64,000 bases of DNA from Chrysemys picta bellii (Eukaryota): assembly GCF_011386835.1 (NCBI RefSeq), contig NC_088791.1, forward strand, positions 281,542,001 through 281,606,000. The letters run 5' to 3'. Positions 3,231 through 56,758 of the stretch are shown here, piece after piece (the stretch's first letter is position 1; every line of letters starts with the position of its first letter). The translations under genes were made by a program, and so were the position numbers. The notes beneath the pieces were generated by a model that saw only the letters and a program-made list of their open reading frames with translations, searched no databases and was not told where the DNA came from.

Positions 3231-3259
3231 AAGTTATAACAAATAATATCCATGGCAAG
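3231..3259 (+). CDS. Candidate first coding exon (5'UTR plus ATG GCA AG, M-A-R) of the + strand microprotein gene
   Basis: Long polypyrimidine acceptor (ttgtttttactgcttctttataatttcAG), donor AAG|GTGAAT, ATG at 3252 preceded by an in-frame TAA. Ends in phase 2, compatible with the exon at 12255. Confidence 0.35.
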
Positions 3260-3321
3260 GTGAATAGGATGATATAACAATTGTCTCACAACACTATGCA
3301 TATATAGAGTAGTGTATAAGA

Positions 3322-8445: not shown

Positions 8446-11400
8446 GAGGTAAGGAGATATTTCTGATTTATGAGCCCAGTCAAAAGTAGATTTTATCTGC
8501 ATGTGTGTGTCTGCCCTCCAAGCGAGGCACTGTTACCAAACAGTGCCCTGCAGAGAAAAGTTTATTTTCTCACGTAGAAGAGACCATTACCTTGAAAAGA
8601 TTGCAAGACTGCTTGGAGTGAAATGCCTCATATTTAACTGTGATGCGTGAGTCCTGGAGAGGTACACAAGAATTTAACTTGCTCTTCTGCTCTAGTAGCC
8701 TACATAAAAATAGCCTGCTCTCTCTTTAGATCTTAATATACCATAAAGCCTTAGTGGCATTTAAAAATCTTTAACTTTCAGTTAATATACATTTCAGCAT
8801 GTTGCTTTTATTTTAACAATAATGAATATAAAGCTGTGCTGTCCTTTGCCATGCTTTGAGCTGTTCAGATAACGCACCGCAGGGTTGTTAGGCATGACTC
8901 AAATAGGCCCACTGTGCGCTATTTGAATGGAAAGTACTTCTTTTCATTCATCATTGCTTAACTAGTTTTCTGGTTATGTGTTTCCTAAACTTTCTGAATG
9001 ACACCCCTATGCCCACAATTCCTAATTTGTTTAAGGTCAGTGCCAAATGCTTGACACTCTGTTAAAGCTTTTATTCCTTAAACTCTGTTTGTAAAATGGT
9101 CAGGTTGCTGCTCATTTTCTGATCTTGCAATAGAAAATGCATTTCACGTATTTCTGCAGAAATACTTTGTCACTGTGTAATAGATGATTATTCTCTGAAA
9201 GATGAAAAAATGTGGCAGAGTCTGTCTGGGAAAAGGTTCCCCCTATTGTGTGATATAATGTATGAGTAATCATAAATGTAAAACACTTGATGTGACAATT
9301 TCCTATATAATTATTATTCAGTAGTTAGTAGGCACAGTATACTATATTACTCCTGTTATATATTTATATGGTGGACGCTATGTATTCATAATATGGTTTA
9401 ACATGTTGTATGCGTAGTATCTACCCATCTGAGGGATATTCTTCCCCCAGGCTGACAATTGAAAACTGGCAGTGTTCTTTTCTTTTCTTATGAGCCACTA
9501 CAGGGTAGAAAAAATTTAAGGATAGCAGTGTATTTACTTCTTCTTTACAATTCCGATTGTTGAATCTCTCTCTCTCTCTATATATATATATGCAAGAAAT
9601 AGCTGAAAAAATCAGGTAAAATGTTTCCATGTTTTAAAGTAGTAGTAGATGCCATTGCTATGTATTTATTACAGGCATAGTTTAGAAGAGAAGAAGATGC
9701 TGTCAATGATTCTGGAATATTTTCTTCACTGTAGTGGCCACTGAGTTGAATGGGAATTCACTGATGTGTATAGTAATGCATCTTGCAATTTATCATTTCT
9801 AATCAGTGTTGGGCAGTGAAAACCAACAAACTGTCCCTTACAAAATGGACCTTTGTGCACTCTGATTTGATTTAAGAATTGATTTCATAAAAGAAGGTAT
9901 TCAAATAGTTGTACATTTAAAATGTATTAAGTTCCATTTTTCTTTTGCTATATTTTGTAAAATATTTTCAAATGTAAACAGTATGCCTCTCACACATGTC
10001 AAATCAAAGTCCTACTATTTATTCAAAAATATATTTACCTAATGTAATTGGAAGCTTATTGCACTCTCATAAATGTATATATTGTGACTTCAAAAGTATG
10101 TACTGAACTTTTGCTTAAACTACTAGTATGTGGATTTCTTTCAAATTTATTTTTAATTAATGATATTAAGGATAAGGTCCTTTACTATATGTACTTTAAA
10201 ATTCACAATAAAGTTTCAGAATTTGTTTTATACAATGCTGAGGTTTTGTGTTGAATTTTATTATGGAAATCTACTTGCATTGATACCTTGGTAAGATCCA
10301 TTCCTCGAGCTGCGTGTGTAAATCTGCTTCACATCATAATGATTTAAATCGGGTCTGTCATATGAGAAATGGCCATATCTCCATTCAGTGAAGAGCAGTC
10401 TTCTTTTAAATAGAGAAAGCTGCTCTGCTGAAGAAAGGAACTACTGACACCTATGTAATCTATGCTTGAGAAGGCAAAAGCCAAGAATTCGTAGTATTTC
10501 AGTGTACTGGGCTCAGTGATGAGGAAATATACAATAACTGGTGGGTCTGTTCTAGCCAGAAAAAGGTACAGAAGAAACTAGGTGGGCTAAAGGAATAAAC
10601 ATGGAGGAAAACATTTAGGTACATTGGGCATATACTAATGAGTATATTAATTTAAAAATTCTAAATCACCATTTTATAACTTTCTATGAATGGAAAAAAT
10701 CATTCACAGATTTACAGTGTTCAAATACACTGTTCACTCGGTTTTATAGCCTTTCATTTTTACTCTTTACCTAGCCATTGTTTTTAATGCTCTTTTATTA
10801 GTTACTTAGTAGTTACTTAGGCAAAGCTTTCGTTGACAATCTGTGAGGATTTCTCCTGCGTAAAACTGTTTTGGATCAGCCTCTTAAAAGCTCCTAATTT
10901 TTTCACTTCTTTTCTCTATACCCTTTTTAAAAAATGACATTGTTTTGCTTATAAAACCTCTCAGTAGTTTTTTTCTTGACAAAATATCATCACCCATTTA
11001 TAAACATCATCAACTGATTGGGACAGCTATGCTCAGGAATATAAGTTTTTTTATTTCAGCTAACTGCTGTGGCAGAGCTAGCCAAGAGCACAACATGTTA
11101 TATTTTTTCCCTGGGAAACACAAAAAATTAGGGACATTAAAAAAAATTATTGACAACACATTCTTAGGGCCTGAGACTTCTCCCATTAAAGTCCACAGTA
11201 GTTTTGCCATTCATTGTAGTGGGACTGGGATCAGGTCCTTAGATTTTATAGATGGAATTTTCAAAAACACTCAGTGTCAGCCTAACAGTGCTCCCATGGA
11301 TGTCAGTTTGAAAACTCCAATTGATTTCAGTGGGAGCAGAGTTAGGTGAATGCTGAGCAGTTCCCCCTATACGGAGATATATATCCCTTTACAGTGCAGT

Positions 11401-11976
11401 TATTCACATTTAAATTTTTAAAATCTAGGAACATGCCCATTTCAGTATTTCTTTCAGAAATCCAAATATATTTTCTAAACTCTGGTTCAGCCAACTGTTG
11501 GCTAATTCAAATGGAGATTTTGTAATAAGAACCTGGCAGAGTTATTATGTAATTGAAGGGTCAAATTCTGCCATCCTTTGTTTCCTATATGTATGGTTCC
11601 CAGTAAAATCCAGGTCAACACTGGATCCCAATGTAGAAAACACTTTGGCCAAGTCACTACTGACAAACAACTTTAATAGAGTTACACCAGTGGAGAATTT
11701 GGCCCCCTCTCTTTTTTTATAGCGTGATTCCTTTAAAAAATGTGAAAAAGAAAGTTGAATTGTCATTTGAAAAGCTGAATTTTAAATTCATGCTCTTAAA
11801 ACACCTTCAGGTCATTGCAGAGATACCTAGTATCTCCATGCTTTGCTGTTTCTGCAACATTTAGTATTATTTGCATAATTAAAGCTATGCTATGGACAGC
11901 CTCTCTCAACATGCTCAGCTGAATTAAAACCCTGACACTCCAACCAAGAGAGAAGCAAACATTTTTCATCCCTAAA

Positions 11977-12032
11977 ATGGAAAAGGATATTGAAGTAGTC
12001 TCATTCGAGGAAACACTCAGGACCAACAGGAG
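11977..12032 (+). CDS. Candidate microprotein coding exon A: MEKDIEVVSFEETLRTNR(R)
   Basis: Strong Kozak aaaATGG, upstream in-frame TGA at 11920-11922, donor AG|GTAGGC, phase 2 end matches the next exon. Confidence 0.55.
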
Positions 12033-12254
12033 GTAGGCTGGATTGTCTGTATCTTGCAAGTATAGCCAGGGTCAAGGAATAACACCGGTGCTATTCTATA
12101 GCATAAATAAAGATGATTATTCATACTTTTCAAGAATTAATGTCATACCATAGTCTATTGCCCATTTTCATGCTACCCATCATCAGTTCTGTCTGTCTTA
12201 TTTCCATGTCATTCATACTGTGATTGTCTTTTGATGAATGTCCTTCTGTTGCAG

Positions 12255-12334
12255 GCTGTTACTGGTGTTCACATTCCCTCTCCTCCTTTTTGCCATATAC
12301 TCTAATATCTTATATTTTAATACAAGTGACAATG
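12255..12334 (+). CDS. Candidate microprotein coding exon B, hydrophobic/TM segment: LLLVFTFPLLLFAIYSNILYFNTSDN
   Basis: Acceptor tccttctgttgcAG, donor ATG|GTAAAT, 80 nt in phase 2 to 1, open frame encoding a hydrophobic helix. Confidence 0.6.
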
Positions 12335-12761
12335 GTAAATGATTTGTGTAATTTAGATCCAGATCTCATAGTCTCGACTCAAGTTGGTGGGCACTTCTAG
12401 ATCTTACGAATGGTCCTGTTGATTTCAATATCATACAGTGCTCCTGTGAGTTAGTGCTCAATAACATGTGAAATGTTGTGTGATTTGGCTCTTAATATAT
12501 TGGTTCACCTATGCAGAATTTGCACTTGGTAAAGGTTACATTGCCCTTTGTTCATCATTATTCATGCTGTTAGGGGCAGAAAGAATTAAACCTGCTGTCC
12601 CTGAGCAATGGGCCCAATTTTGATAATAAAATATCAGTTTTACAATACTGTAACTTGATAGGTATAATTTCTCCTTCTATCCACATGTGTGAGATCAGAA
12701 TCAGAGCTTGGTACTGTCCTCATACAAACCAGAGTGCAGGCTCAAGATCCAATTTTTCAAG

Positions 12762-13385
12762 TCATAGAATCATAGATTCTTAGAAATGTAGGACTAGAAG
12801 GGATCTTGTGATGTCATCTAGTCTGGCGCCCTGCACAGAGTCAGCACCAAGTAAACCTAGACTGTCCCTGCCAGATGTTTGTCTAACCTGTTCTTAAAAA
12901 CCACCAGTAATGGGGATTTCACAACCTCCCTTGGAAGCCTATTCCAGTACTTAACTACCCTTATAGTTAGAACGTTTTTCCTAATAACTAACCTAAATCT
13001 CCCTTGCTGCAGAGTTAGCTGATTACTTTTTGTCCCACCTTCAGTGGACGTGGGGAACAGTTGATCACTATCCTCTTTATAACACCCTTAGTGTATTAGA
13101 AGACTATCAGGTCCACCCTCAGTCTTCTTTTCTCAAAACTCAACATGCCCAGTTTTTTTAACCATTCCTCATTGGTCAGGTTTTCTAAACCTTTCATCAT
13201 TTTTGTTGATGTCCTCTGGACTCTCTCCAATTTGTCCACATCTTTCTTAAAGCATGGTGCCCCAAACTGGACACAATTCTCCAGTTAAGGCCTCACCAAT
13301 GCAGAGGAAAGCAGAACAATTACCTCCTGTGCCTTACATACAGAATGATATTAGCTTTTTTTGCAGCTGCATCACATTAAAGACT
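12762..13385 (-). mobile_element. CR1 LINE 3' fragment (older subfamily), antisense within intron 2 of the candidate gene
   Basis: Starts with TCATAGAATCATAGA (reverse CR1 tail), followed by typical CR1 3' sequence (TAGAAGGGATC..., CCCAAACTGGACACAATTCTCCAG). Confidence 0.9.
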
Positions 13386-13762
13386 TATGTAATGATTACC
13401 ATGTGGGCCCAAGAAACAAGAAAAAATGGCAAATTTGTTATGTATCCAATAGGAATGTAATAAACATTCAAGTTCAGCAGCAATATTCTACAAAAGTGTT
13501 GAACTTTAAATCAGGCATTACTCTGACTGAACAAACATAACAGCATTGTCAGCTCTCAGTTGTTTGATGGTGCATACTTTTTCTACATTATGTGACATTT
13601 CTTTATCCGTCAAGTTAGATGTTAACAAAAGCAACTGAAAGTTATACTCAGGCACTTTCCTCTATATGTATGTATTTAATGGGATTTTTTTTTTAACAAA
13701 ACAAAACATTTCTTTTGCCCATGAAGTGCTGCAGAAAGTGCTTGAGCGTCTTTGTCTTGCAG

Positions 13763-13818
13763 TTTACTTGAAAGAAGAGGCCGAGACTGGAGTGAACTTT
13801 CCAACAGCCAATGTGTGA
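13763..13818 (+). CDS. Candidate microprotein terminal coding exon C: (V)YLKEEAETGVNFPTANV*
   Basis: Acceptor tctttgtcttgcAG, phase 1 start matches exon B, TGA at 13816-13818, followed by UTR-like sequence. Confidence 0.55.
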
Positions 13819-14247
13819 CAAAGCATGCTTAATGGGAAATGAAGTCAAATGTTTTTCTCTTTGAAAATGGCTTCCTCTAGATTTGATGGAGAGCAGATTT
13901 ACTGTAGGAAATTGTTCAATTCCATTCTTGCTTGTTCACTTTGCATTTCATACAAAATGTTTTCTTGCATGCAACATGAAGCAGAATTTTGTCACTGTAC
14001 TGCAGAGGGAAGAAACATAATGTGCTTTGGCGGTCCCTGACAAGATACATACATTAAAACTTTTAAATCTAAATTTATGGGGGAAATGTATGTCATGTCC
14101 CATCATAGAGCTTCACAGCTATTGCATTCATTGCCACTGGTTACTAGCAAAGCTGTTCTTTCTTGTGTTTGTAGCTTGTTTCCCCTGTAAGTGCAATACT
14201 TATACAGAGCTATATTTGGGAGATTGCTTTGTAAAGCTCTGCAAGTA

Positions 14248-14253
14248 AATAAA
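14248..14253 (+). terminator. Putative polyadenylation signal AATAAA
   Basis: About 430 nt after the candidate stop, with a GT/T-rich tract at about 14272-14310. Confidence 0.45.
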
Positions 14254-17200
14254 GTCTTGTTCATAAGCAATTTAACGTGTAACTGTTGGTTAACGTTTTT
14301 TTTAACTGTTTACAAAAAAGTTCAAGTCTTTTTCTCAAACTACATAATTAGATTTTTTTTCAGGTCACAACTCACTGTCTTATCAAAAGGAGTGGGTGGA
14401 TTAGAATTTGGATGTATGAGAAATGCTAAATGGAAACTGTTCAATACTGCTTTGACTGTGGCCAGTCAAACTGTGGTGTCAATTAAAAACTAAGAAGAAC
14501 ATACTGGTAATCCTTTGCTGAATCCAAATGTCTATAACAGTTTGTAGAGCTAGTAAGTATGGGGCATGTTTTAACCAGTTATAAAGCTGTTTAGATGGAT
14601 CAAAAATATATTGGAGAAAGATTATGACAAACATAGAATCCAATTCCCATGTCATATCATCCTTCCTTTTATGTTTTCCATTCTTATTTTAATGTTAAGT
14701 ACTTGAAATACATCCAATATTCTGAACATGTTAATTACAAAATAATTTAAGAGCCTTAGTTCCTCTGAGAGACAGTAGCACCATATTTTCAATCTGAGAA
14801 TACGCAGCAAAATGCTCTGACAATGCTGAATCCCTTTTCTTTTTCCATATTCTGTTTTACATATCCTACACAAGGATTGTACTTGGAAATTTGTCTTTCC
14901 TAAGTAGTGTCCTAACAACAAAGAGGCAAGTTTGCATCCCCTGAGCAGGATCTTGCATTTGTTATTAAAGTTGAATGACCACTGAGGCTAGTGGCAGTTT
15001 AATCTTGAATGAGGAATGCAGGATCTGCCCACTCTAGTTCTTTGCAAACAAACTGTCACAGCTCGGACCTCCTATGGTTTTGCATGTGGGATGTTTATAG
15101 AAAACAGTGGGAGTTTTCTGTGGGGATTATGGCAGGATTAGGAGATATTGCAATGTATCTAGTGCTCTGAGAATTTATCTCCATACAGGTTCTTAACCCA
15201 TGTTTGTAAAATAATTATTTTTGCAGTGGTATGTTCCATATTATGGGAGTTGCTCATAGAAGTCTTAGGGCCCTGTGCAGTAATACCTGCTCACAATAGG
15301 CTTGAATTAAGAGTACTTCGGTAATGTTAACTCTGCATGCCTCTATGTGTATTTGTATTTTATTCATAAAATTATTTTGACATAGCTTTTTTGTGCTTTG
15401 CGTCTTTCTCTTTTCTACTGATCTGTAGCTCACACTGGCATGGTCCCCGTAGGCTTCCACTGACTATGTTTCATATTTTTTCTAATTAATATTCTTTCTT
15501 ATGTGGTCTCTCTGGACCTGTGCTGACATTGCTTCTTTTCACGGCGACACAGTGTCATCCTGTTAGAGACAAATGTTGACATCTTTAAAACGTATACTCT
15601 TAAAAAAGGAATATGTCAGTATTTTACAGTAATGGTCAGTGTGTGGGGCCATTACAGTGAAATGCTGTAGTGTTCTTTTTTAAATATGACAAGAATGTCA
15701 AGTTAAAGTACAAGAAAATGGGAAATTAGCATCATTTAGAAGAAATAATAACTTGATCATATGCAAAAAAATAGTTGTTTGCCAAATGTATATATCTGTT
15801 GTTTCACTTGAATAACTGAAACTCTCAAGCCTAAATTAAAGGGACACTGTCAGTAAGTTTAGGTCAAAAACATAAGTTTGAAAATAGAAAAGTTTTACCA
15901 GTGCTAATAAAAATACTTTCATGCTTTAAAAACAATAATTCAATAAAGCCTTCATAGATATTCTCTGGCACTGTTGGAAACACAACATTACTTCATTGTA
16001 TTAGTGCCAGAGCACTTAATGCTGAACCTGACTAAGCAGCTCTTAGTCAGTGTCTGCCTCTGTAGCTTTTCCATGCTTGATATTCCCAAGTCTGTCTGTC
16101 TACCTACTCAGTCTATAGTATTTCTCTAACGTCTATCACTGTATTCAAGTACTGAGAGTTCTGTACACAGAGTGAAATTCATTGCTCTGCAGAGGTTCCG
16201 TATCACTGTATCATTTAAATACCACTTAAGGCATAGGTTTAAGTGGGACTGAAATGGTGCATAAACTTTGCTCTGGCCCTTTGCATATTGATGAGCTTCA
16301 TCAAGTGACCATGGAATGAGACCCTGATAGTCCATTATGAGTGAAATACACCAGTAAACAGTATAAGTGATAAACCTGTATTTATCTGATTCTTTCACAT
16401 TAATAATTTAAAGTGCTATGTGTAATACTGGTAAAGACTTTTTTTAAAATTAGACTCATAAATACAAAGTCCCCGTAAAAACTAAAGTTTTATAATTAAA
16501 TATTAGGTGCTTTTGGTTTCTGTAGCTTGTTTGAAATAGATGGAAAAAGGCTGTTCCTAGGACATTTCTAGGATCAGGCACTTAGAGGCCGTTAAAAACT
16601 GCATAACTAATTATACTTATTTTTTTTTAGTTGAAAAAAATCTATTAAACACATTTTAAATTAAATTAAATTAAATCTTGACCGACAATTAAGTTTAAAC
16701 CTGATACAATAAAGCCAATTTATCCTTACAGTGTGATTCAGTTCTGGAAAGTGACTGTGTCAAAGTGTTATCCTGGTGTTCCAAGTTCATTGTCTCTCAG
16801 TCACTAGCATATGAAATGTGCCCAATTTTGCTATTCAGAAAAGATATTTTTCTAATGGCTAGCCCAGAAAACTCATCTGGCTTCTGGCCACCAGGCAAAA
16901 TTCTGCTTTCAGTGTCATGGGAATGAATCCTCTGTCTTCAAATTATGCCCTTGTTATGAGGGTAAGGTGGGGTTTGCTTCCTTGTGGAAAAGGTGGGTGG
17001 TCCTGTCTAATCTGTATGGAACTGCACTGTTTCCAGAGCCCCTCCATTCCATTGCATCTTAATGGCAGCATAGAGGGGGCTCACGGCATGGAGGTAGTGT
17101 TCTCCAAAGGTACTTTATGACCTTAATGGTGAATCTCAGCTGGGTTAATATGGGGTGACAATGCATGAAAACTCATTCCTCCATCATGTCTATTTCCAGG

Positions 17201-21933: not shown

Positions 21934-23948
21934 TGTGCATTTTGTTAGTGCTTGCCATGCGGTAGGTGCTGCCAATGCACACAAGGAGGATCAATCAGTC
22001 CCTGGAAGGGCTTACCACCAAAGGCTTTCATTGTAGAAAATGGTCTGCACAGGCAGACCCCAGGTCTCATGTGGAAACCAATTGACTCCAACAGGACTCT
22101 GTATGTGCCCAGCAGTCTGTCTGTATGGAGCAGCTTGCAGGGCTGGGATGTAAGGGCTTAGCCCTAATAACACTCAAGTTTAGGGAACTAAGTTATTCAT
22201 GCCCATAGGTGTTTTTAATAACAGGTCCCAATTTCAGAAGTAACTTAAGAAATGGAGGATGAGCAATTCTCAACTGTGTCAGCCAATGGACAAAAATATA
22301 AACAGAAAGGCAACCAGCAAGAAATTTTAAACTAAAAGCCTGTCCTCAGTCCATTTGTATTACATCATGTGAGTGTCACATGTGGTTTAATCTTTACTGC
22401 TCTAATTGAAGAGAAGAGCAGAAAAGATTGGTCCTGGAATGCTAAAGATTATCAATATTTTTCTATCCAAAACCACAATGAAAACAAACAAAAATATGTG
22501 GTAATCATTCCAACTGCAGTCTGATCTAGACTCGTCCAACCTAATTTAATCTGACCTATCGATCATTAAGAATATTTTCCTATTAATAATAAATAAATAT
22601 GATTGAACAGAAATGTTATACATTTTATTCAATAGCAATGATAGCCAAACATTTATAATTAATGTTAAGATTTTACCAAATAGGGCCATATTGTGTTATC
22701 CAATTTGACCCCCGTGTGCCATCTAGGAAGTTAAAAAGGGCTAGAAACTGGCTCTGTCGGAGATGAACCTCCTGCTTTTGTCAGCCTACTGCTCTTTTTT
22801 TTGTCAGCTACCCTCCCTCTTCCCTGCCGGGGTGTGCTGGGAGCAGGAGTTGGATAGGTCATTGTGAAGGAGATCCATTCCACTACACCTGTGTTGCATT
22901 GGCATTGGGACTATTAAGGACTCTGGACCAGTTTCACAAGTTAAAGCTGTTTGGAAACATTTCTAAGTGTCATAATGGCTGGAGTAGACCTTGAGAGTCA
23001 GGGAGCTAGAACCGGCTTCTTTTCACCTCTCCTGAACTCAGGCTCAGGAAGGATCAAACCCATCATGATTGCTTGTTAATAAATTCAATAGCTGTATATA
23101 ATTTAAAAAGAGAATATCTTGCTCAGGATTATCAGCTTGTGTACAGTCACATACCTCTTTGGTGGAGATATGGTCTTTATTTTTTGTTTAACATAATGGT
23201 GAGCTCATTGTGAGTGCTGATAAAATAAATATTAAGGTGTAATCAGAATAATAATTAGTAATAATGAAGATCCAAGATCCAGTTTTTTCTGTGATGTAAG
23301 TCAGTTGTGGATAATGGAAGTTGCACCAGGGATAAATTTGTCTGTCTAGGTCCTTGCATAATATGAGTACACTGGGTGCACAATAAGATTGTCATGGTTG
23401 CTTGAGGGTACAATTCTGCCTTCATATATACAGGTGCAGGACCGATCCATTAGAGTCAATCGGAACTCGGTGCATGAACTCAAGGACTGAATGTGGCCCT
23501 TAGCTGTGCATTTTTTGACTCCTTAAGTGTTTTAAATCTGTCCTTAATATTCCATGAATGTAGTTGTTTGTACTGAATACACTGTAGTTGCTTTTGTGCA
23601 GTATTCTATGTATCTCTGTCTCTTTTTGTCTTTCAGCCTGTCTTTTTTTTCCCTTTTTTGCCCTAAAATATTACGTTTGTTTACATGGGTTTGCACTGAG
23701 TGCATTACTTGCAAGTAGCAGAGTGAAATACAGATACTATATGAGTAATAAAAGCACTGGTTCCTAACAACTGTACATAAATATAACATTTTAAGGAAGG
23801 TTATAATGTTTGACGTATTTCACATCTCCCTAGAGATGCATTGTTGGCCAGGTAAGTGATTTTCATTTTTATTTTTGTTTGTTTCACCAAATCATTACAA
23901 GAGCTTGTGCAAAAAGAAAACATAACCATACCCCTTGCAGCTATTTTG

Positions 23949-42907: not shown

Positions 42908-44020
42908 TACAGACCCGTTTACCCATGGATGTCGGGAATCAAGCCGTCACGACCGTGTGATAATGGACCGCTGGTTAAGAAGACCATGCTGGAATATCTT
43001 AAGATATCTATATATTCATGTATAATTATCTAGGATTGCATACGTATTTACAGGATCCCAAATACTGCAGGCCTATCTGTTAACGGTGCTTTGCAAGAAT
43101 ATAAATTCAAATGTGTAATCTAATAAAAAGATTATTATTACTTACACAGGGGTGAAATGAACTCAGGACACTTACCGGTACGGGGCAGGGGCGGCTCTGG
43201 CCCCTGGAAGGGGTGGGGCCTGGGGTGGAAGGGGCAGGGCTAGGGTCAGCATCCCCCTTCCAGGCCACCTGTCTGCTCCGCCCAGGGTTTCCATTGCGAT
43301 TTAAAGGGCCCGGGGCTCTGGACACCGCTGCTGCGGTAGCAGCGTCCGAAGCTCCGGGCCCTTTTAAATAGCCAGCCCCGGCGCAGCTGCTCCCTTTGCC
43401 CCGCCCCCCCCCATTGGCGGCTGAGGGGGGGCAAAAGGGGCAGGGACCTTAAAGCGCTGCAGGGTCCTTTGCCGCGGCAGCGCTTTAACGTTGCTACGCC
43501 CCCCCCACCCCCGTCGGCGGTCCAGAGCTGCTGCAGCAAAGGACCGTCCTTTAAGTGCTGCCGTGGCAGTGCTTTAATGTCCCTACCCTTTTTGCCTCCC
43601 CCGTCGGCGTGTTGTACATCTTTCCTGCTGACGAGGGGGAGGGAAAGGGGAAGCAACGTTAAAGTGCTGCCGTTACTTAAAGGATGTTTAAGGACGGTCC
43701 TTTGCCGTGGCAGTGCTTTGAGGATCCTTAAAGCGCTGCCACAGCAAAGGACCGTCCTTAAAGCACTGCCACAGCAGCGCTTTAACGTTGCAGTCCCTTC
43801 CCCCCTGTCGGCAGTAAAGACGTACAACACGTTTCCGCTCTGCACTTCCTGTCAATTTCTATGTCAGTGAGTTACTGAGCAGATCTGTAGCGCTACATAG
43901 CAAGTTCCTGTATCACGTGTTAACGAGTCTCACATGTTAAATAGGTAGCAGTAGAGGCATGGCGCTACCGCGCATTAAGTGGATTTGCACGTAAACGAGT
44001 CATGCGTAAACGGGTCTGTA
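42908..44020. mobile_element. Tc1/mariner-type non-autonomous element with GC-rich palindromic interior
   Basis: TA TSD; TIR CAGACCCGTTTAC / GTAAACGGGTCTG; flanked by (TATC)n on both sides. Confidence 0.85.
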
Positions 44021-46365: not shown

Positions 46366-47178
46366 TAGGGTTACCATATTTTAATTTTAAAAAAGGAGGA
46401 CACTCCACGGGTCCCGCCCCCGCCCCGCCCCAACTCCACCCCTTCCCCAAAGTCCCAGCCCCAAATCTGCCCCCTCCCCTGAACGCTCCGCCCCCTGCTC
46501 CTTCACCTTCCCTGCTTCCCGCGAATCAAATGTTCGCGGGAAGTCTGAAACAGGAAGGCAGCAGATAAGCTGGGGCTGGGCCGGGGCGGGTCCCAGTCCA
46601 GCCCCCCCCGGCCGAGTGGCTCTCTCTGGCGGCCGGACGGCCGGCCCAGGCCAAGAGGCTCTGGCCCTGGCGTCTCCCGCCCGGCTCGGCTCGGGCCCTG
46701 GGGCGCCGGGCCCTGCCCCCGGCTGAGCACCGCCAGCCCTGACCCGGCCCCGGCCCCCGGCCCCCAGCTGAGCACCACCGGCCCCGGCCCCTGACCCCGG
46801 CCCCCAGCCGAGCACCGCAGGCTCCGGCCCCCGGCCGAGCGCCATGGGCCCCTGGCCCGGCCCCCAGCTGATTACCGACAGCCCCGGGCCCCGGCCAAGC
46901 GCTGCCAGCCCCGGCCCTGCACCGCCGGCCCCTGGCCAAGCACCGCCGGCCCCGGCCCGGCCCGGCCCCGGCCCCCGGTCCTGGCCCTGCACTGCCAGCC
47001 CCGGCCCCCGGCCGAGCACCGCCGGCCCAAGCGGCCCCGGCCCCCAGCCGAGCACCGCCTGGCCCTCCCTCCCTATTTTCCCGGACATATCCGGCTTTTT
47101 GGGATTTCCTCCCGGATGGTGATTTGAGGCCCAAAAAGCTGGACATGTCAAGGAAAATCCGGACGTATGGTAACCCTA
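46366..47178. mobile_element. hAT-like element (TAGGGTTACCATA ends) with GC-rich minisatellite
   Basis: TIR TAGGGTTACCATA / TATGGTAACCCTA; flanking duplication TGAGAAC; CCGAGCACCGCCGGCCCCGGCCC-type tandem units at about 46600-47060. Confidence 0.85.
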
Positions 47179-47521
47179 TGAGAACCATATAGTGTGAATC
47201 CATTGGCTTCTTCCAAACAAAGATGACAATTTTAATATGTTTTTGTGCATTCTTCATCACAAAATCAACCTGAATAAACAATCTACTATTTAGCTATAGA
47301 TAATAGCTATACATACACCTCCTTAGGGGGAGTTAACTAAAAATAATGGGATTATAGAATGAATGAAGCAAAGAACTTAGCTTGAGTATCAGATGGTGAA
47401 ATAGCTTCCTTCGGGAAAATGTGGAAGCTGCATTTCTTGGACATTTGAAACTGAACTAGATGCAGTGCAAGAAAATATATTGAATGGAACAATCCGGCAC
47501 CAGCAGACTGATGGACTAAGC

Positions 47522-49690: not shown

Positions 49691-49796
49691 CTACAATGTC
49701 CAGTGTACACTTCAGGTTTGTCGGGGAAGAAAATGTGATTTCTCTGCTCATTAAGGCTCTGCTCGGGCTTCTATGGGTAGGGATAGGAGCTTAAAA

Positions 49797-50767
49797 TGCC
49801 AAGGGTCGGTCCTGGGGCCGGTTTTGTTCAATATCTTCATTAATGGTCTGGAGGATGGCATGGACTGCACCCTCAGCAAGTTTGCAGATGACACTAAACT
49901 GGGAGGAGTGGTAGAAACGCTGGAGGGTAGGGATAGGATACAGCAGGACCTAGACAAATTAGAGGATTGGGCCAAAAGAAATCTGATGAGGTTCAACAAG
50001 GACAAGTGCAGAGTCCTGCACTTAGGACGGAAGAATCCCATGCACTGCTACAGACTAGGGACTGAGTGGCTAGGCAGCAGTGCTGCAGAAAAGGACCTAG
50101 CGGTTACAGTGGATGAGAAGCCCTTGTGCCCTTGTTGCCAAGAAGGCTAACGGTATTTTGGGCTGTATAAGTAGGGGCATTGCCAGCAGATCGAGGGACG
50201 TGATCATTCCCCTCTATTCAGCATTGGTGAGGTCTCATCTGGAGTACTGTGTCCAGTTTTAGGCCCCACACTACAAGAAGAATGTGGAAAAATTGGAAAG
50301 AGTCCAGCAGAGGGCAACAAAAATGATTAGGGGGCTGGAGCACATGACTTATGAGGAGAGACTGAGGGAACTAGGATTATTTCGTCTGCAGAAGAGAAGA
50401 ATGAGGGGGGATTTGATAGTTGCTTTCAACTACCTGAAAGGGGGTTCCAAAGAGGATGGATCTAGACTCTTCTCAGTGGTAGCAGATGACAGAACAAGGA
50501 GTAATGGTCTCAAGTTGCAGTGGGGGAGGTTTAGGTTGGATATTAGGAAAAGCTTTTTCCCTAGGAGGGTGGTGAAGCACTGGAATGGGTTACCTAGGGA
50601 GGGGGTGGAATCTCCTTCCTCAGAGGTTTTTAAGGTCAGGCTTGACGAAGCCCTGGTTGGGATGATTTAGTTGGGGCTTGGTCCTGCTTTGAGCAGGGGG
50701 TTGGACAAGATGACCTCCTGAGGTCCCTTCCAACCCTTATATTCTATGATTCTATGATTCTATGATT
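49797..50767 (+). mobile_element. 5'-truncated CR1 LINE (RT C-terminus plus 3' UTR)
   Basis: [38 protein letters not shown]; ends in (ATTCTATG)3; small internal deletion at about 50120 and an in-frame stop. Confidence 0.97.
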
Positions 50768-51174
50768 GGAATATTCAGTGCCCCAGCCCATCCTTGCAAC
50801 CCCTATACAAGGGTATAATAAAATGATACTTCTCCTTACATATGATGTGCTTCCTAAAACAATAGGGTCAAATTGCCATGAGGATTTTACCCACTGATTT
50901 GAGATGGGGGTGCTCAGCAGTTGCAATAGTCCATGGGGAACTTCAGGTGAGACTGGGTCTTTGGGATACACAGTCCATCCCTGAAGGGCTCCAGCCAGCA
51001 AAGGGTGCCAGTGCAGGCTGCAACATTCTTTGGAGTGGTAGAGTCTGAATCCCTAGTGTGTCCATCCCCACTCTGTGCATGGTGCTGACCTGGACAGCAC
51101 CATGTCCCCACCTTCACCTGCAGTCTCCTAAGGTTGTGGCAGACAAAGGAATAACAAGATCCAGTAGCTGGCAG

Positions 51175-54491: not shown

Positions 54492-54565
54492 CATACCAAA
54501 CTGATGCGTTTCAACTACACTAAACAATTTACACATACTTATTTTGAGGAGCCTGAGGCATTTTG

Positions 54566-55275
54566 AGGGAACTGACTGGCTAAGCAGCAGTTCTGCAGAA
54601 AAGGACCTGGGAATTACAGTGGAAGAGAAGCTGGATATGAGTCAGCAGTGTGCCCTTGTTGCCAAGAAGGCTAACAGCATATTGGGCTCCATTAGTAGGA
54701 GCATTGCCAGCAGATTGAGGAAAGTGATTATTCCCCTCTATTTGGCACTGGTGAGGCCACATCTGGAGTATTGCGTCCAGTTTGGGGTCCCCCACTACAG
54801 AAAGGATGTGGACAAATTGGAGAGGGTCCAGCGGAGGGCAACGAAAATGATCAGGAGGCTGGGGCACATGACTTATGAGGAGAGGCTGAGGGAACTGGGC
54901 TTGTTTAGTCTCCAGAAGAGAAGAGTGAGGAGGGATTTGATAGCAGCCTTCAACTATCTGAAGGGGGGTTCCAAAGAGGATGGGGCTCGGCTGTTCTCAG
55001 TGGTGGCAGATGACATGACAAGGAGCAATGGTCTCAAGTTGCAGTGGGAGCGGACTAGGTTGGATATTAGGAAACACTATTCCACTAGGAGGGTGGTGAA
55101 GCACTGGAATGGATTACCTAGGGAGGTGGTGGAATCTCCATCCTTAGAGGTTTTTAAGGCCCATCCTGACAAAGCCCTGGCTGGGATGATTTAGTTGGTC
55201 CTGCTTTGAGCAGGGGGTTGGACTAGATGACCTCCTGAGGTCTCTTCCAACCCTAATCTTCTATGATTCTATGAT
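54566..55275 (+). mobile_element. 5'-truncated CR1 LINE, young copy
   Basis: Uninterrupted ORF2 C-terminal frame (ORF 54544-55194, [32 protein letters not shown]) and CTATGATTCTATGAT tail. Confidence 0.97.
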
Positions 55276-56262
55276 ACTCATAACAAACTGGATTGGTTTA
55301 CAGAAAATCCTGAAACAGTGTGGCGTCTGTAGCTGTTCTCAGTGACAGACTTTCAGTTTCATAATGAATGATAACTGACATTAGTGTGAAAAGGCTAGTG
55401 TGGGCAAAGTGTCTTTGTATGGGGTTACCAGTCTGAAAGACGTTGGAAAATAATGTGAAACTGAACTAAAAACCTTGTAACAGAATGAAAAATGATATGA
55501 TGTGGGGTGTTTGTTGAAGCGAATGAAAAGTCGTATGGCAGAGAATAAAGTAATTTCGCTCACCATGAATCCATGTGTCATGTGGCAAATTCCTGAGACT
55601 TAGAAAATACGGTATGCTTTCCTTCTGCTCTTCTTTCTACTTCAAACCCTCTCATTTTCTCCCTCCACCTCCTTCCCTTTCGTCACTTGTACCTCTTTCC
55701 TTCCCTTGCTTTACAGTGAATGTTTGATTAGCAGCTACTCAAACACCGTACTATCCAAGTTCCGCTTCTTGTAGCAGTGCCCCTCTTCCTTTTCACGTCT
55801 CTCACAGTGGTTCTTTATCCTGGCAGTTTTCATCACTGCTGTGTTTTTGCAACTCTCACTCCCATCACCATTTTCCTTTCTTCTCCTCCCTATGATTCAC
55901 TTCCCCTGTGCTTCTTTCACTGGTGCAAAGGGACACTGTCAAGTATTTTTGTCCAAGACAGAAACAAAATCAAATAGAACTGTTCAGTGTTAAAACAAAC
56001 AAACAAAATCACCTCAGTGAAAAACAACAACAACAACCTTTTTATCTATTGAAATATTATCCTGCAGTGGTGGAAACCGAAACATCGCTTTGCTGTGCAA
56101 AGGCTTGATACACAAATCACTGAGGTCTATAGGAGACGCCTGTTGACTTAAAATGGGCTTTTATTAGAACTGGCTGGAAGATGTGAACATTTTTGTACCA
56201 GTAGGATCTGAGTGACTCAAATCTTTATTTATTTATTGTATCTATCCTACCATTGTATCTAT

Positions 56263-56706: not shown

Positions 56707-56758
<52 letters not shown>
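56707..56758. repeat. (GT)26 microsatellite
   Basis: Directly visible. Confidence 0.97.

What the first reader, a model, noticed from the sequence alone, without database searches (positions are those of the whole stretch)
11977..14253. Candidate spliced 63-aa single-pass membrane microprotein gene invisible to ORF finders
Three small exons (56+80+56 nt) with canonical GT-AG sites join in frame to give MEKDIEVVSFEETLRTNRRLLLVFTFPLLLFAIYSNILYFNTSDNVYLKEEAETGVNFPTANV*. Seen in sequence: a strong Kozak context, basic residues (RR) just before a hydrophobic helix, an N-T-S sequon after it, and AATAAA plus a GT/T-rich tract downstream. Inference: type II topology, like SMIM-type regulatory micropeptides. 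I do not recognise the protein, so it may be unannotated.
Basis: partly seen in the sequence, partly recalled or inferred. Interest (0 to 1): 0.75.

Follow-up and report, generated by a model that had tools for sequence, protein, structure and literature searches.

The report
Unproven spliced turtle microprotein model
The three small pieces really do join in frame into a 63-residue membrane-type peptide, but nothing found here shows that the peptide is made; the only part that looks constrained is the last exon with its tail, which fits a rare, probably non-coding spliced transcript better than a new protein gene.

Summary
The model has an ATG at 11977 in a good Kozak context, GT-AG borders at 12032/12255 and 12334/13763, a stop at 13816-13818 and AATAAA at 14248. 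It encodes one hydrophobic helix preceded by two arginines.

The gene reading is not established.
- Four public runs (three turtle species, four studies; RNA only by guess) gave no contig that joins the exons.
- The one contig over exons 1-2 keeps intron 1.
- Exon-by-exon searches found no relative: a word search of 5.8 billion clusters for exon 3, full phmmer of 1.84 billion representatives for exon 2, and Pfam for all three.
- Exon 2 differs at 4 of 80 bases (two of them amino-acid changes) from a sister species that is about 1.5% diverged, which is more than its flanks.

Two points favour a real transcript.
- Two contigs end or begin exactly at the donor at 12334 and the acceptor at 13763.
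- The stretch 13762-14486 shows 0 changes in 725 bases.

Best reading (0.45): a low-level spliced, probably non-coding transcript that carries a chance ORF. The real microprotein stands at about 0.2, and pure chance plus a conserved non-coding block at about 0.3.

The scan has one related note on this same window (s1-318517) and none on other DNA.

The parts
11977..12032 (+). Model exon 1: ATG in a good Kozak context and 18 codons plus 2 nt, followed by donor GT at 12033
   Evidence: The donor scores in the 99.1 percentile of GT sites in the window. The open frame around it is only 37 codons (11923-12033), and unspliced read-through stops at TAG 12034-12036.
12033..12254 (+). Model intron 1 (222 nt)
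   Evidence: It has GT-AG ends and the acceptor scores in the 99.8 percentile. It is kept unspliced in the only contig that covers it, X2 record 9 (11977-12334, same species, no mismatch).
12255..12334 (+). Model exon 2: hydrophobic helix encoded by a T/C-rich stretch, with an N-T-S sequon directly after it
   Evidence: Kyte-Doolittle 19-residue mean 2.22. Organism A differs at 12279 and 12291 (synonymous) and at 12297 (Ile>Met) and 12302 (Ser>Cys), against 2 changes in the 277 flanking bases (X3 record 18). phmmer against 1.84 billion representatives found no relative.
12238..12342 (+). Unspliced 34-codon ORF in the exon 2 frame with its own ATG in a weak context. If intron 1 is retained and intron 2 is removed, it would give a 50-residue form.
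   Evidence: No gene with this product is on record.
12335..13762 (+). Model intron 2 (1428 nt)
   Evidence: It has GT-AG ends; the donor scores in the 95.6 percentile and the acceptor in the 97.6 percentile. Contigs of organisms A and C cross both borders unspliced (X3 record 18, X5 record 31).
12751..13305 (-). CR1 retrotransposon fragment inside intron 2, antisense to the model
   Evidence: It is 68-70% identical to the CR1 copies at 50218-50775 and 54745-55278. A reverse-transcriptase tail ORF lies on the minus strand at 13096-13239. Depth there is in the thousands.
13763..13818 (+). Model exon 3, coding part (17 full codons plus stop)
   Evidence: It is identical in organisms A and C. No protein of 32-103 aa shares three 5-residue words with this frame.
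13819..14270 (+). Putative 3' untranslated part, with ATTAAA at 14053 and AATAAA at 14248-14253
   Evidence: It shows no unusual RNA structure (z = -1.37) and no Rfam family.
13762..14486 (.). Slowly evolving block: 0 substitutions in 725 nt in organism A, and 0 in 494 nt (13729-14222) in organism C
   Evidence: table 8. The background is 40 changes in 2711 nt (1.5%) for organism A and 18 in 1516 nt (1.2%) for organism C over the neighbouring unique contigs. The Poisson chance of zero is about 2e-5 and 3e-3 respectively.
13849..14040 (+). Separate 63-codon ORF inside the conserved block; its inner ATG at 13867 has a good context
   Evidence: It has no relative and no gene on record. About 0.4 such ORFs are expected by chance in a block of this size.

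Best explanation
The locus most likely gives a rare, spliced and polyadenylated transcript of the long non-coding kind. It uses the donor at 12334 and the acceptor at 13763 and ends at one of the poly(A) signals at 14053, 14248 or 14482. The 63-codon reading frame is most likely a by-product: an ATG, two further good splice sites and a T/C-rich stretch that translates as a hydrophobic helix.

Shown here:
- The sequence features exist.
- The terminal-exon block changes far less than its surroundings among three closely related turtles.
- Two contig ends coincide with the borders of intron 2.

Inferred:
- That these ends reflect splicing.
- That the transcript is non-coding.

If the peptide were made, a 63-residue chain would be finished before its helix has left the ribosome. 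It would therefore have to enter the ER membrane after translation, as tail-anchored and very small membrane proteins do, with its N-terminus in the cytosol because of the two arginines before the helix.
For: - Contig ends: X2 record 9 ends exactly at 12334. X1 record 8 begins at 13762, the G that the acceptor AG and the last base of exon 2 share. About 0.03 such coincidences are expected among roughly 46 contig ends in 5 kb.
- Conservation: 0 changes in 725 nt in 13762-14486 against a background of 1.5% in organism A, and 0 in 494 nt against 1.2% in organism C. This covers the non-coding tail as much as the 56 coding bases.
- Poly(A) signals are present.
- No relative of any exon was found in the protein searches.
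- Intron 1 is retained in the one contig across it, which puts a stop 19 codons after the ATG.
- Exon 2 carries 4 changes in 80 nt.
- Upstream ATGs lie at 11887, 11892 and 11911 if the transcript starts further up. Contigs do cover 10736-12027.
Against: - No contig actually joins 12334 to 13763. The depth bins are fully accounted for by the unspliced contigs listed.
- X1 has no depth on exon 2 and X2 none on exon 3. Dips are not evidence, because human-like contigs are dropped without notice.
- The runs are only guessed to be RNA. Even, patchy depth of 2-10 over introns, flanks and exons alike would also fit low-coverage DNA, and in that case the contig ends mean nothing.
- One more exact contig end, at 11977, has no splicing explanation, which weakens the argument from coincidence.
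- Conservation was measured only among species 1.2-1.5% apart.
Confidence: 0.45

Rival explanations
1. Nothing specific is transcribed here. The three-exon model is a chance combination in gene-poor, repeat-rich DNA. The slowly evolving block at 13.76-14.5 kb is an unrelated conserved non-coding element (for instance an enhancer) or simply a locally low mutation rate.
For: - Models passing the same thresholds occur at 11 ATGs in this window, and a second one with a helix and a poly(A) signal starts at 22040.
- About 20 such models are expected over the windows already read, even under a Markov null.
- No junction contig was found, and depth is equal over introns and exons.
- No relatives were found.
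- No host-gene Pfam domain occurs in any open frame of 55 aa or more in the whole window; only RVT_1 and hAT turn up. This fits a gene desert, where conserved non-coding blocks are common.
Against: - Two contig ends fall exactly on the borders of intron 2, with P about 3e-4 if the ends are random.
- The conserved block starts at the acceptor within the resolution available: in organism C the last changes are at 13717 and 13728.
- The block carries three poly(A) signals on the + strand.
Confidence: 0.3
2. One reading: a real three-exon gene for a 63-residue single-pass membrane protein with its N-terminus in the cytosol, unannotated and restricted to turtles or a subgroup of them. A 50-residue form that starts at 12238 when intron 1 is retained is a sub-variant.
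For: - All four splice sites are strong; intron 1 has the best pair, at the 99.1 and 99.8 percentiles.
- The ATG has a good Kozak context, two arginines precede a helix with KD 2.22, the stop lies in the last exon, and there is a poly(A) signal.
- Markov expectation is 0.03 per window.
- Contig ends fall at donor 2 and acceptor 2, and the last exon is conserved.
- The frame and splice sites of exon 2 are intact in organism A, and both amino-acid changes keep the helix hydrophobic.
Against: - No protein of 32-103 aa shares words with the exon 3 peptide, although that exon is identical in three species.
- No relative of exon 2 was found among 1.84 billion representatives, and Pfam found nothing.
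- Intron 1 is unspliced in the only contig across it.
- Exon 2 changes faster than its flanks, 4 in 80 nt against 2 in 277 nt, which is not what purifying selection gives.
- The conservation of exon 3 extends equally over more than 650 non-coding bases, so it is not a coding signal.
- The sequon is too close to the helix to count.
Confidence: 0.2
3. The conserved last exon belongs to a longer gene whose other exons lie outside the model or outside the window. The reader's exons 1-2 are then not its true partners.
For: - The length limit of the word search (32-103 aa) leaves longer proteins that end in the exon 3 peptide untested.
- In X1 the last exon is covered but exons 1-2 are not, while 10736-11107 and 11452-11855 are covered.
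Against: - No Pfam-bearing open frame of 55 aa or more lies on the + strand upstream or anywhere else in the window apart from transposon domains.
- The ends of the upstream contigs do not sit on splice-like sites.
- The other two frames entering at 13763 stop after 2 and 22 codons.
Confidence: 0.05

Closest known systems
smORF-bearing spliced long non-coding RNAs of vertebrates (the class from which myoregulin, DWORF and mitoregulin were later recovered)
   Same: It is a short, few-exon, polyadenylated unit in gene-poor DNA. It has no CpG island at its start and carries an ORF under 100 codons with one hydrophobic helix.
   Different: The recovered cases have ORFs conserved across vertebrate classes and relatives in databases. 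Here no relative exists for any exon, and the helix exon is the fastest-changing part.
Regulin-type SERCA-regulating micropeptides (phospholamban, sarcolipin, myoregulin, endoregulin, another-regulin, DWORF)
   Same: Size class, a single helix, and a cytosolic N-terminus predicted from the basic residues before the helix.
   Different: Regulins carry the helix at the extreme C-terminus with at most a few luminal residues, whereas here 22-23 residues follow it. There is no Pfam match to any of their families and no sequence relative.
SMIM-named small integral membrane proteins
   Same: It is a small single-pass membrane protein of unknown function, which is all the name means.
   Different: SMIM genes are named because they are conserved and annotated across vertebrates. 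This model has no annotated or predicted counterpart in the collections searched.
The 48-aa turtle-restricted microprotein reported earlier in this scan (s1-328291)
   Same: It is a three-exon microprotein model in the same genome, from the same reader, and missed by annotation.
   Different: According to that note (not checked here), the earlier case was kept under purifying selection in all major turtle lineages. No such evidence could be obtained for this one.

Membership tests
Protein-coding gene (generic) | Exons joined in RNA at the predicted borders | tested here: inconclusive
   Four runs gave no joining contig, and intron 1 was retained in X2 record 9. However, contig ends sit exactly at 12334 and 13762. 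The runs are only guessed to be RNA, and what was laid were contigs, not reads.
Protein-coding gene (generic) | Purifying selection on the ORF (few amino-acid changes relative to silent ones and to flanks) | tested here: inconclusive
   Exon 2 has 2 silent and 2 replacement changes in 80 nt, more than its flanks. Exon 3 has no change, but neither have the 650 non-coding bases after it. The differences in exon 1 were not listed. Divergence is too low to give any power.
Protein-coding gene (generic) | Relatives among known or predicted proteins | tested here: not met
   The exon 3 frame gave no candidate in 5.8 billion clusters. The exon 2 frame gave only a tandem-repeat artefact, P0001. Pfam found nothing for the three frames. 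The exon 1 frame is too short for the word search. The joined peptide was not searched.
Regulin-type SERCA micropeptides | Transmembrane helix at the extreme C-terminus (tail anchor with a very short luminal end) | tested here: not met
   The helix lies within exon 2. Six exon 2 residues, the split-codon Val and 16 residues of exon 3 follow it.
Regulin-type SERCA micropeptides | Sequence match to a family profile | tested here: not met
   Pfam gave no family at E up to 10 for the exon 2 frame.
Regulin-type SERCA micropeptides | Binding to and regulation of SERCA; expression in muscle or another SERCA-rich tissue | not testable with these tools
   This needs experiments.
Type II (N-in) signal-anchor membrane protein | One helix of about 20 hydrophobic residues with more positive charge on its N-terminal side | tested here: met
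   The KD 19-residue mean is 2.22. Arg-Arg comes directly before the helix and acidic residues after it. This holds only if the peptide exists.
N-glycoprotein | Sequon far enough from the membrane (about 12-14 residues) to reach oligosaccharyltransferase | tested here: not met
   The Asn of N-T-S is the first residue after the helix. The distance rule is taken from established knowledge, not from a tool.
Spliced polyadenylated long non-coding RNA | Splice sites in use, a poly(A) signal, and no conserved ORF | tested here: inconclusive
   Poly(A) signals are present. Use of the splice sites is only hinted at by the contig ends. No ORF has relatives.
Known structured RNA families (Rfam) | Match at the gathering score | tested here: not met
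   There were 0 matches in the whole window. The last exon folds no better than shuffles, z = -1.37.

The most novel reading that the evidence does not exclude
A young, turtle-restricted, de novo three-exon gene whose 63-residue product is inserted into the ER membrane after translation with its N-terminus in the cytosol. It would have been born from non-coding DNA next to a conserved terminal exon, and its helix exon would still be evolving fast.
Probability: 0.15. Interest if true: 0.55.

Novelty: new member of a known kind. Interest (0 to 1): 0.28.

Why it matters
If the peptide were real, it would be an unannotated, lineage-restricted membrane microprotein. That would give a case of de novo gene birth in a slowly evolving reptile genome, with a clean test system (63 residues, one helix).

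As the evidence stands, the practical value is a caution. Strong splice sites, a good start context, a helix and a poly(A) signal can be assembled from non-coding vertebrate DNA about once per few windows. The hydrophobic helix comes for free from T/C-rich sequence. The conserved 0.7 kb block at 13.76-14.5 kb is the piece worth a second look, whatever the ORF turns out to be.

Tried and rejected
- **Exact look-ups:** the three local ORFs (13849-14037, 13666-13815, 12238-12339) were looked up in the contig collection, in the hope of fetching orthologous DNA. None is on record.
- **First exons of a longer type II protein (lectin-like receptor or glycosyltransferase):** every open frame of 55 aa or more in the window, on both strands, went through Pfam. 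Only RVT_1 and hAT appeared, plus a marginal IL18BP-like hit. This reading was rejected at that sensitivity; shorter exons would be missed.
- **The single phmmer hit P0001:** rejected as a relative. It is an 854-aa translated tandem repeat that shares only a nine-residue hydrophobic word.
- **Structured RNA in the last exon:** rejected.
- **Transposon origin of the exons:** rejected. They are unique in the window and have low depth.
- **Minus-strand exon reading of the contigs 11977-12334 and 13762-14486:** rejected, because the borders give no GT-AG on that strand.
- **U12-type or shifted acceptor to explain the contig start at 11977:** no fit.
- **Neighbouring windows:** the findings look-up does not reach them.
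- **Share of words:** the roughly 0.3 share first looked like exon-only coverage. One search showed it is patchy coverage of introns and flanks as well.

Full report
**Observation**

- Exon 1 is 11977-12032, exon 2 is 12255-12334, and exon 3 starts at 13763, with the TGA stop at 13816-13818.
- GT lies at 12033 and 12335, and AG at 12253-12254 and 13761-13762.
- The two split codons read AG|G (Arg) and G|TT (Val), so the peptide is as written.
- The ATG has A at -3 and G at +4.
- AATAAA is at 14248, followed by a GT/T-rich tract. ATTAAA also lies at 14053 and 14482.

I searched the model exon by exon and by reference only. The joined 63-residue sequence has no reference, so it was not sent to any search, fold or look-up tool. 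In some searches a local script did translate exon combinations in memory, but only to count models. It printed, saved and searched nothing joined.

**Is it more than chance?**

The four sites fall in the 99.1, 99.8, 95.6 and 97.6 percentiles of all GT or AG in the window.

I then counted three-exon ORFs of 60-120 codons whose ATG has a good context and whose sites are at least as good as the model's weakest ones.
- There are 44 such models at 11 ATGs on the two strands.
- A hydrophobic helix plus a poly(A) signal is added at two ATGs, 11977 and 22040.
- First-order Markov surrogates give 0.03 such ATGs per window.

The thresholds were taken from the model itself, so the model passes by construction. 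Over the 734 windows of this genome already read, even the Markov figure predicts about twenty chance models. The helix is encoded by a T/C-rich run, which gives Leu, Phe and Pro in this frame regardless of function. The anatomy is real but does not decide the matter.

**Reads**

The run search on 11900-14300 listed four DNA runs of the window's own species (0.92-0.94 of the words) and fourteen runs guessed to be RNA that hold 0.06-0.33. I laid four of the guessed-RNA runs (three organisms, four studies) on 10500-15500. All four are Logan contigs.

- **Coverage.** Depth in unique DNA is 2-10 and patchy, and it is the same over upstream DNA, introns and exons. This fits pre-mRNA or contaminating DNA in RNA libraries, or low-coverage DNA runs.
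- **Joints.** No listed joint lies at either intron, though 25 joints were not shown. More tellingly, the depth of every bin over exons 1, 2 and 3 is fully accounted for by the unspliced contigs in table 8, so none of the four runs has a joining contig.
- **Unspliced contigs.** X2 record 9 (same species, no mismatch) runs unbroken from 11977 to 12334, with intron 1 kept. X3 record 18 crosses both borders of exon 2, and X5 record 31 crosses the acceptor at 13763.
- **Dips.** Dips in depth are not evidence, because contigs that resemble human DNA are dropped silently.

Two things in the same table point the other way.

The first is the contig ends. X2 record 9 ends exactly at 12334. X1 record 8 (726 nt) begins at 13762, the G that is both the last base of the acceptor AG and identical to the last base of exon 2. 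That is where a de Bruijn contig should break if spliced and unspliced reads diverge. With about 46 contig ends in 5 kb of unique DNA, about 0.03 hits on the four intron borders are expected. However, the start of record 9 at exactly 11977 has no such explanation, since AA precedes it and there is no acceptor. I leave that unexplained (note).

The second is substitution density.
- Organism A shows 40 changes in 2711 nt (1.5%) over the neighbouring unique contigs, but 0 in 725 nt over 13762-14486.
- Organism C shows 18 in 1516 nt (1.2%), but 0 in 494 nt over 13729-14222, and 1 in 373 nt over 14391-14763.
- The block has an ordinary CpG content.

The constraint, if real, covers the non-coding tail as much as the 56 coding bases. 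It speaks for a functional exon or element, not for a protein.

Exon 2 behaves the opposite way. It has four changes in 80 nt in organism A: 12279 and 12291 are silent, 12297 gives Ile>Met and 12302 gives Ser>Cys. The 277 flanking bases of the same contig have two changes.

**Relatives**

- The exon 3 frame (13639-13815, 59 aa) found no protein of 32-103 aa sharing three 5-residue words in 5.8 billion clusters. This range includes the 63- and 50-residue forms, and exon 3 is identical in three species.
- The exon 2 frame (12238-12339) was scored by phmmer against all 1.84 billion representatives with no length limit. It gave one hit, an 854-aa translated tandem repeat sharing a nine-residue hydrophobic word, so there is no relative.
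- Pfam found nothing for the three frames.
- The exon 1 frame is too short for the word search.
- Exact look-ups of three local ORFs found no called gene.
- Longer proteins that end in the exon 3 peptide remain untested.

**Surroundings**

- All open frames of 55 aa or more in the window, on both strands, gave only RVT_1 and hAT domains and one marginal IL18BP-like hit.
- The window has no Rfam match.
- CpG-island-like stretches lie only at 43.0-44.0 and 46.5-47.25 kb, far from the model.
- Intron 2 holds an antisense CR1 fragment at 12751-13305.
- The exon regions are unique in the window.

The model therefore sits in gene-poor, repeat-rich DNA with no sign of a larger + strand gene that could own exons 1-2.

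The conserved block carries its own 63-codon ORF (13849-14040), which has no relatives either. About 0.4 such ORFs are expected by chance in a block of this size. The last exon shows no unusual RNA structure (z = -1.37).

**Mechanism and verdict**

I weigh three readings.

1. *A rare spliced, polyadenylated, probably non-coding transcript (0.45).* It uses 12334/13763 and carries a chance ORF. This fits the contig ends, the conserved terminal exon, the retained intron 1 (which stops the frame after 19 codons), the fast exon 2 and the lack of relatives.
2. *No specific transcript (0.3).* The model is a chance combination and the block is a conserved non-coding element.

A longer gene that owns the last exon gets 0.05.

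If the peptide exists, the two arginines before the helix predict a cytosolic N-terminus. A 63-residue chain would be released before its helix leaves the ribosome, so insertion would be post-translational, as for tail-anchored and very small membrane proteins. This is inference from established knowledge.

The N-T-S sequon abuts the helix and is unlikely to be used. The protein is not a regulin by any tested criterion, and SMIM is a name rather than a family.

**Novelty**

At best this is a new member of a known kind: an unannotated smORF-bearing transcript. The interest is modest until junction reads and distant orthologues are examined.

Noticed in passing
window 13762-14486 (perhaps to about 14760): This block has no substitution against two sister species that differ by 1.2-1.5% elsewhere in the locus. 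It covers the model's last exon, all three poly(A) signals and a further 230 nt or so.
   Followed up: partly
window 11977, 12334 and 13762: Three contig ends fall exactly on the model's ATG, on the last base of exon 2 and on the G of the second acceptor. The first of these has no splicing explanation.
   Followed up: partly
window 13849-14040 (+): A 63-codon Cys-rich ORF lies inside the conserved block, and its inner ATG at 13867 has a good context. It has no relative and no called gene on record.
   Followed up: yes
window 22040-23079 / 23767 (+): A second three-exon ORF model (64 or 95 codons) passes the same thresholds for splice sites, start context, helix and poly(A) signal. It serves as a measure of the false-positive rate.
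   Followed up: no
window 14194: Organisms A and C both carry one extra A here relative to the window (table 4). This is either a one-base deletion specific to this species or an assembly slip.
   Followed up: no
window 49755-50667 and 54505-55191 (+); 12751-13305 (-): These are CR1 retrotransposon remnants with reverse-transcriptase tail ORFs.
   Followed up: partly
window, one + frame in 14191-63955 and one - frame; not located: Two open frames match the hAT transposase dimerisation domain (E = 2.6e-10 and 8.6e-12). Ten long frames tried were not the ones.
   Followed up: partly
window, one - strand frame of 55 aa or more; not located (not in 53-64 kb): There is a marginal Pfam hit to YLDV-IL18BP-like (an Ig-type fold), with E = 1e-3 among 149 frames. 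It is probably chance.
   Followed up: partly
window 43001-44000 and 46501-47250: These are the only CpG-island-like stretches in the window. The second overlaps a G+C-rich 40/60-nt tandem array at 46711-46958 that produces long spurious ORFs on both strands.
   Followed up: no
window 56707-56758: A perfect (GT)26 microsatellite.
   Followed up: no
window 3231-3260 (+): The alternative first exon of note s1-318517 is a short AG-flanked piece with ATGGCAAG|GT next to a repeat-like inverted stretch. Nothing was laid on it, so it remains untested.
   Followed up: partly
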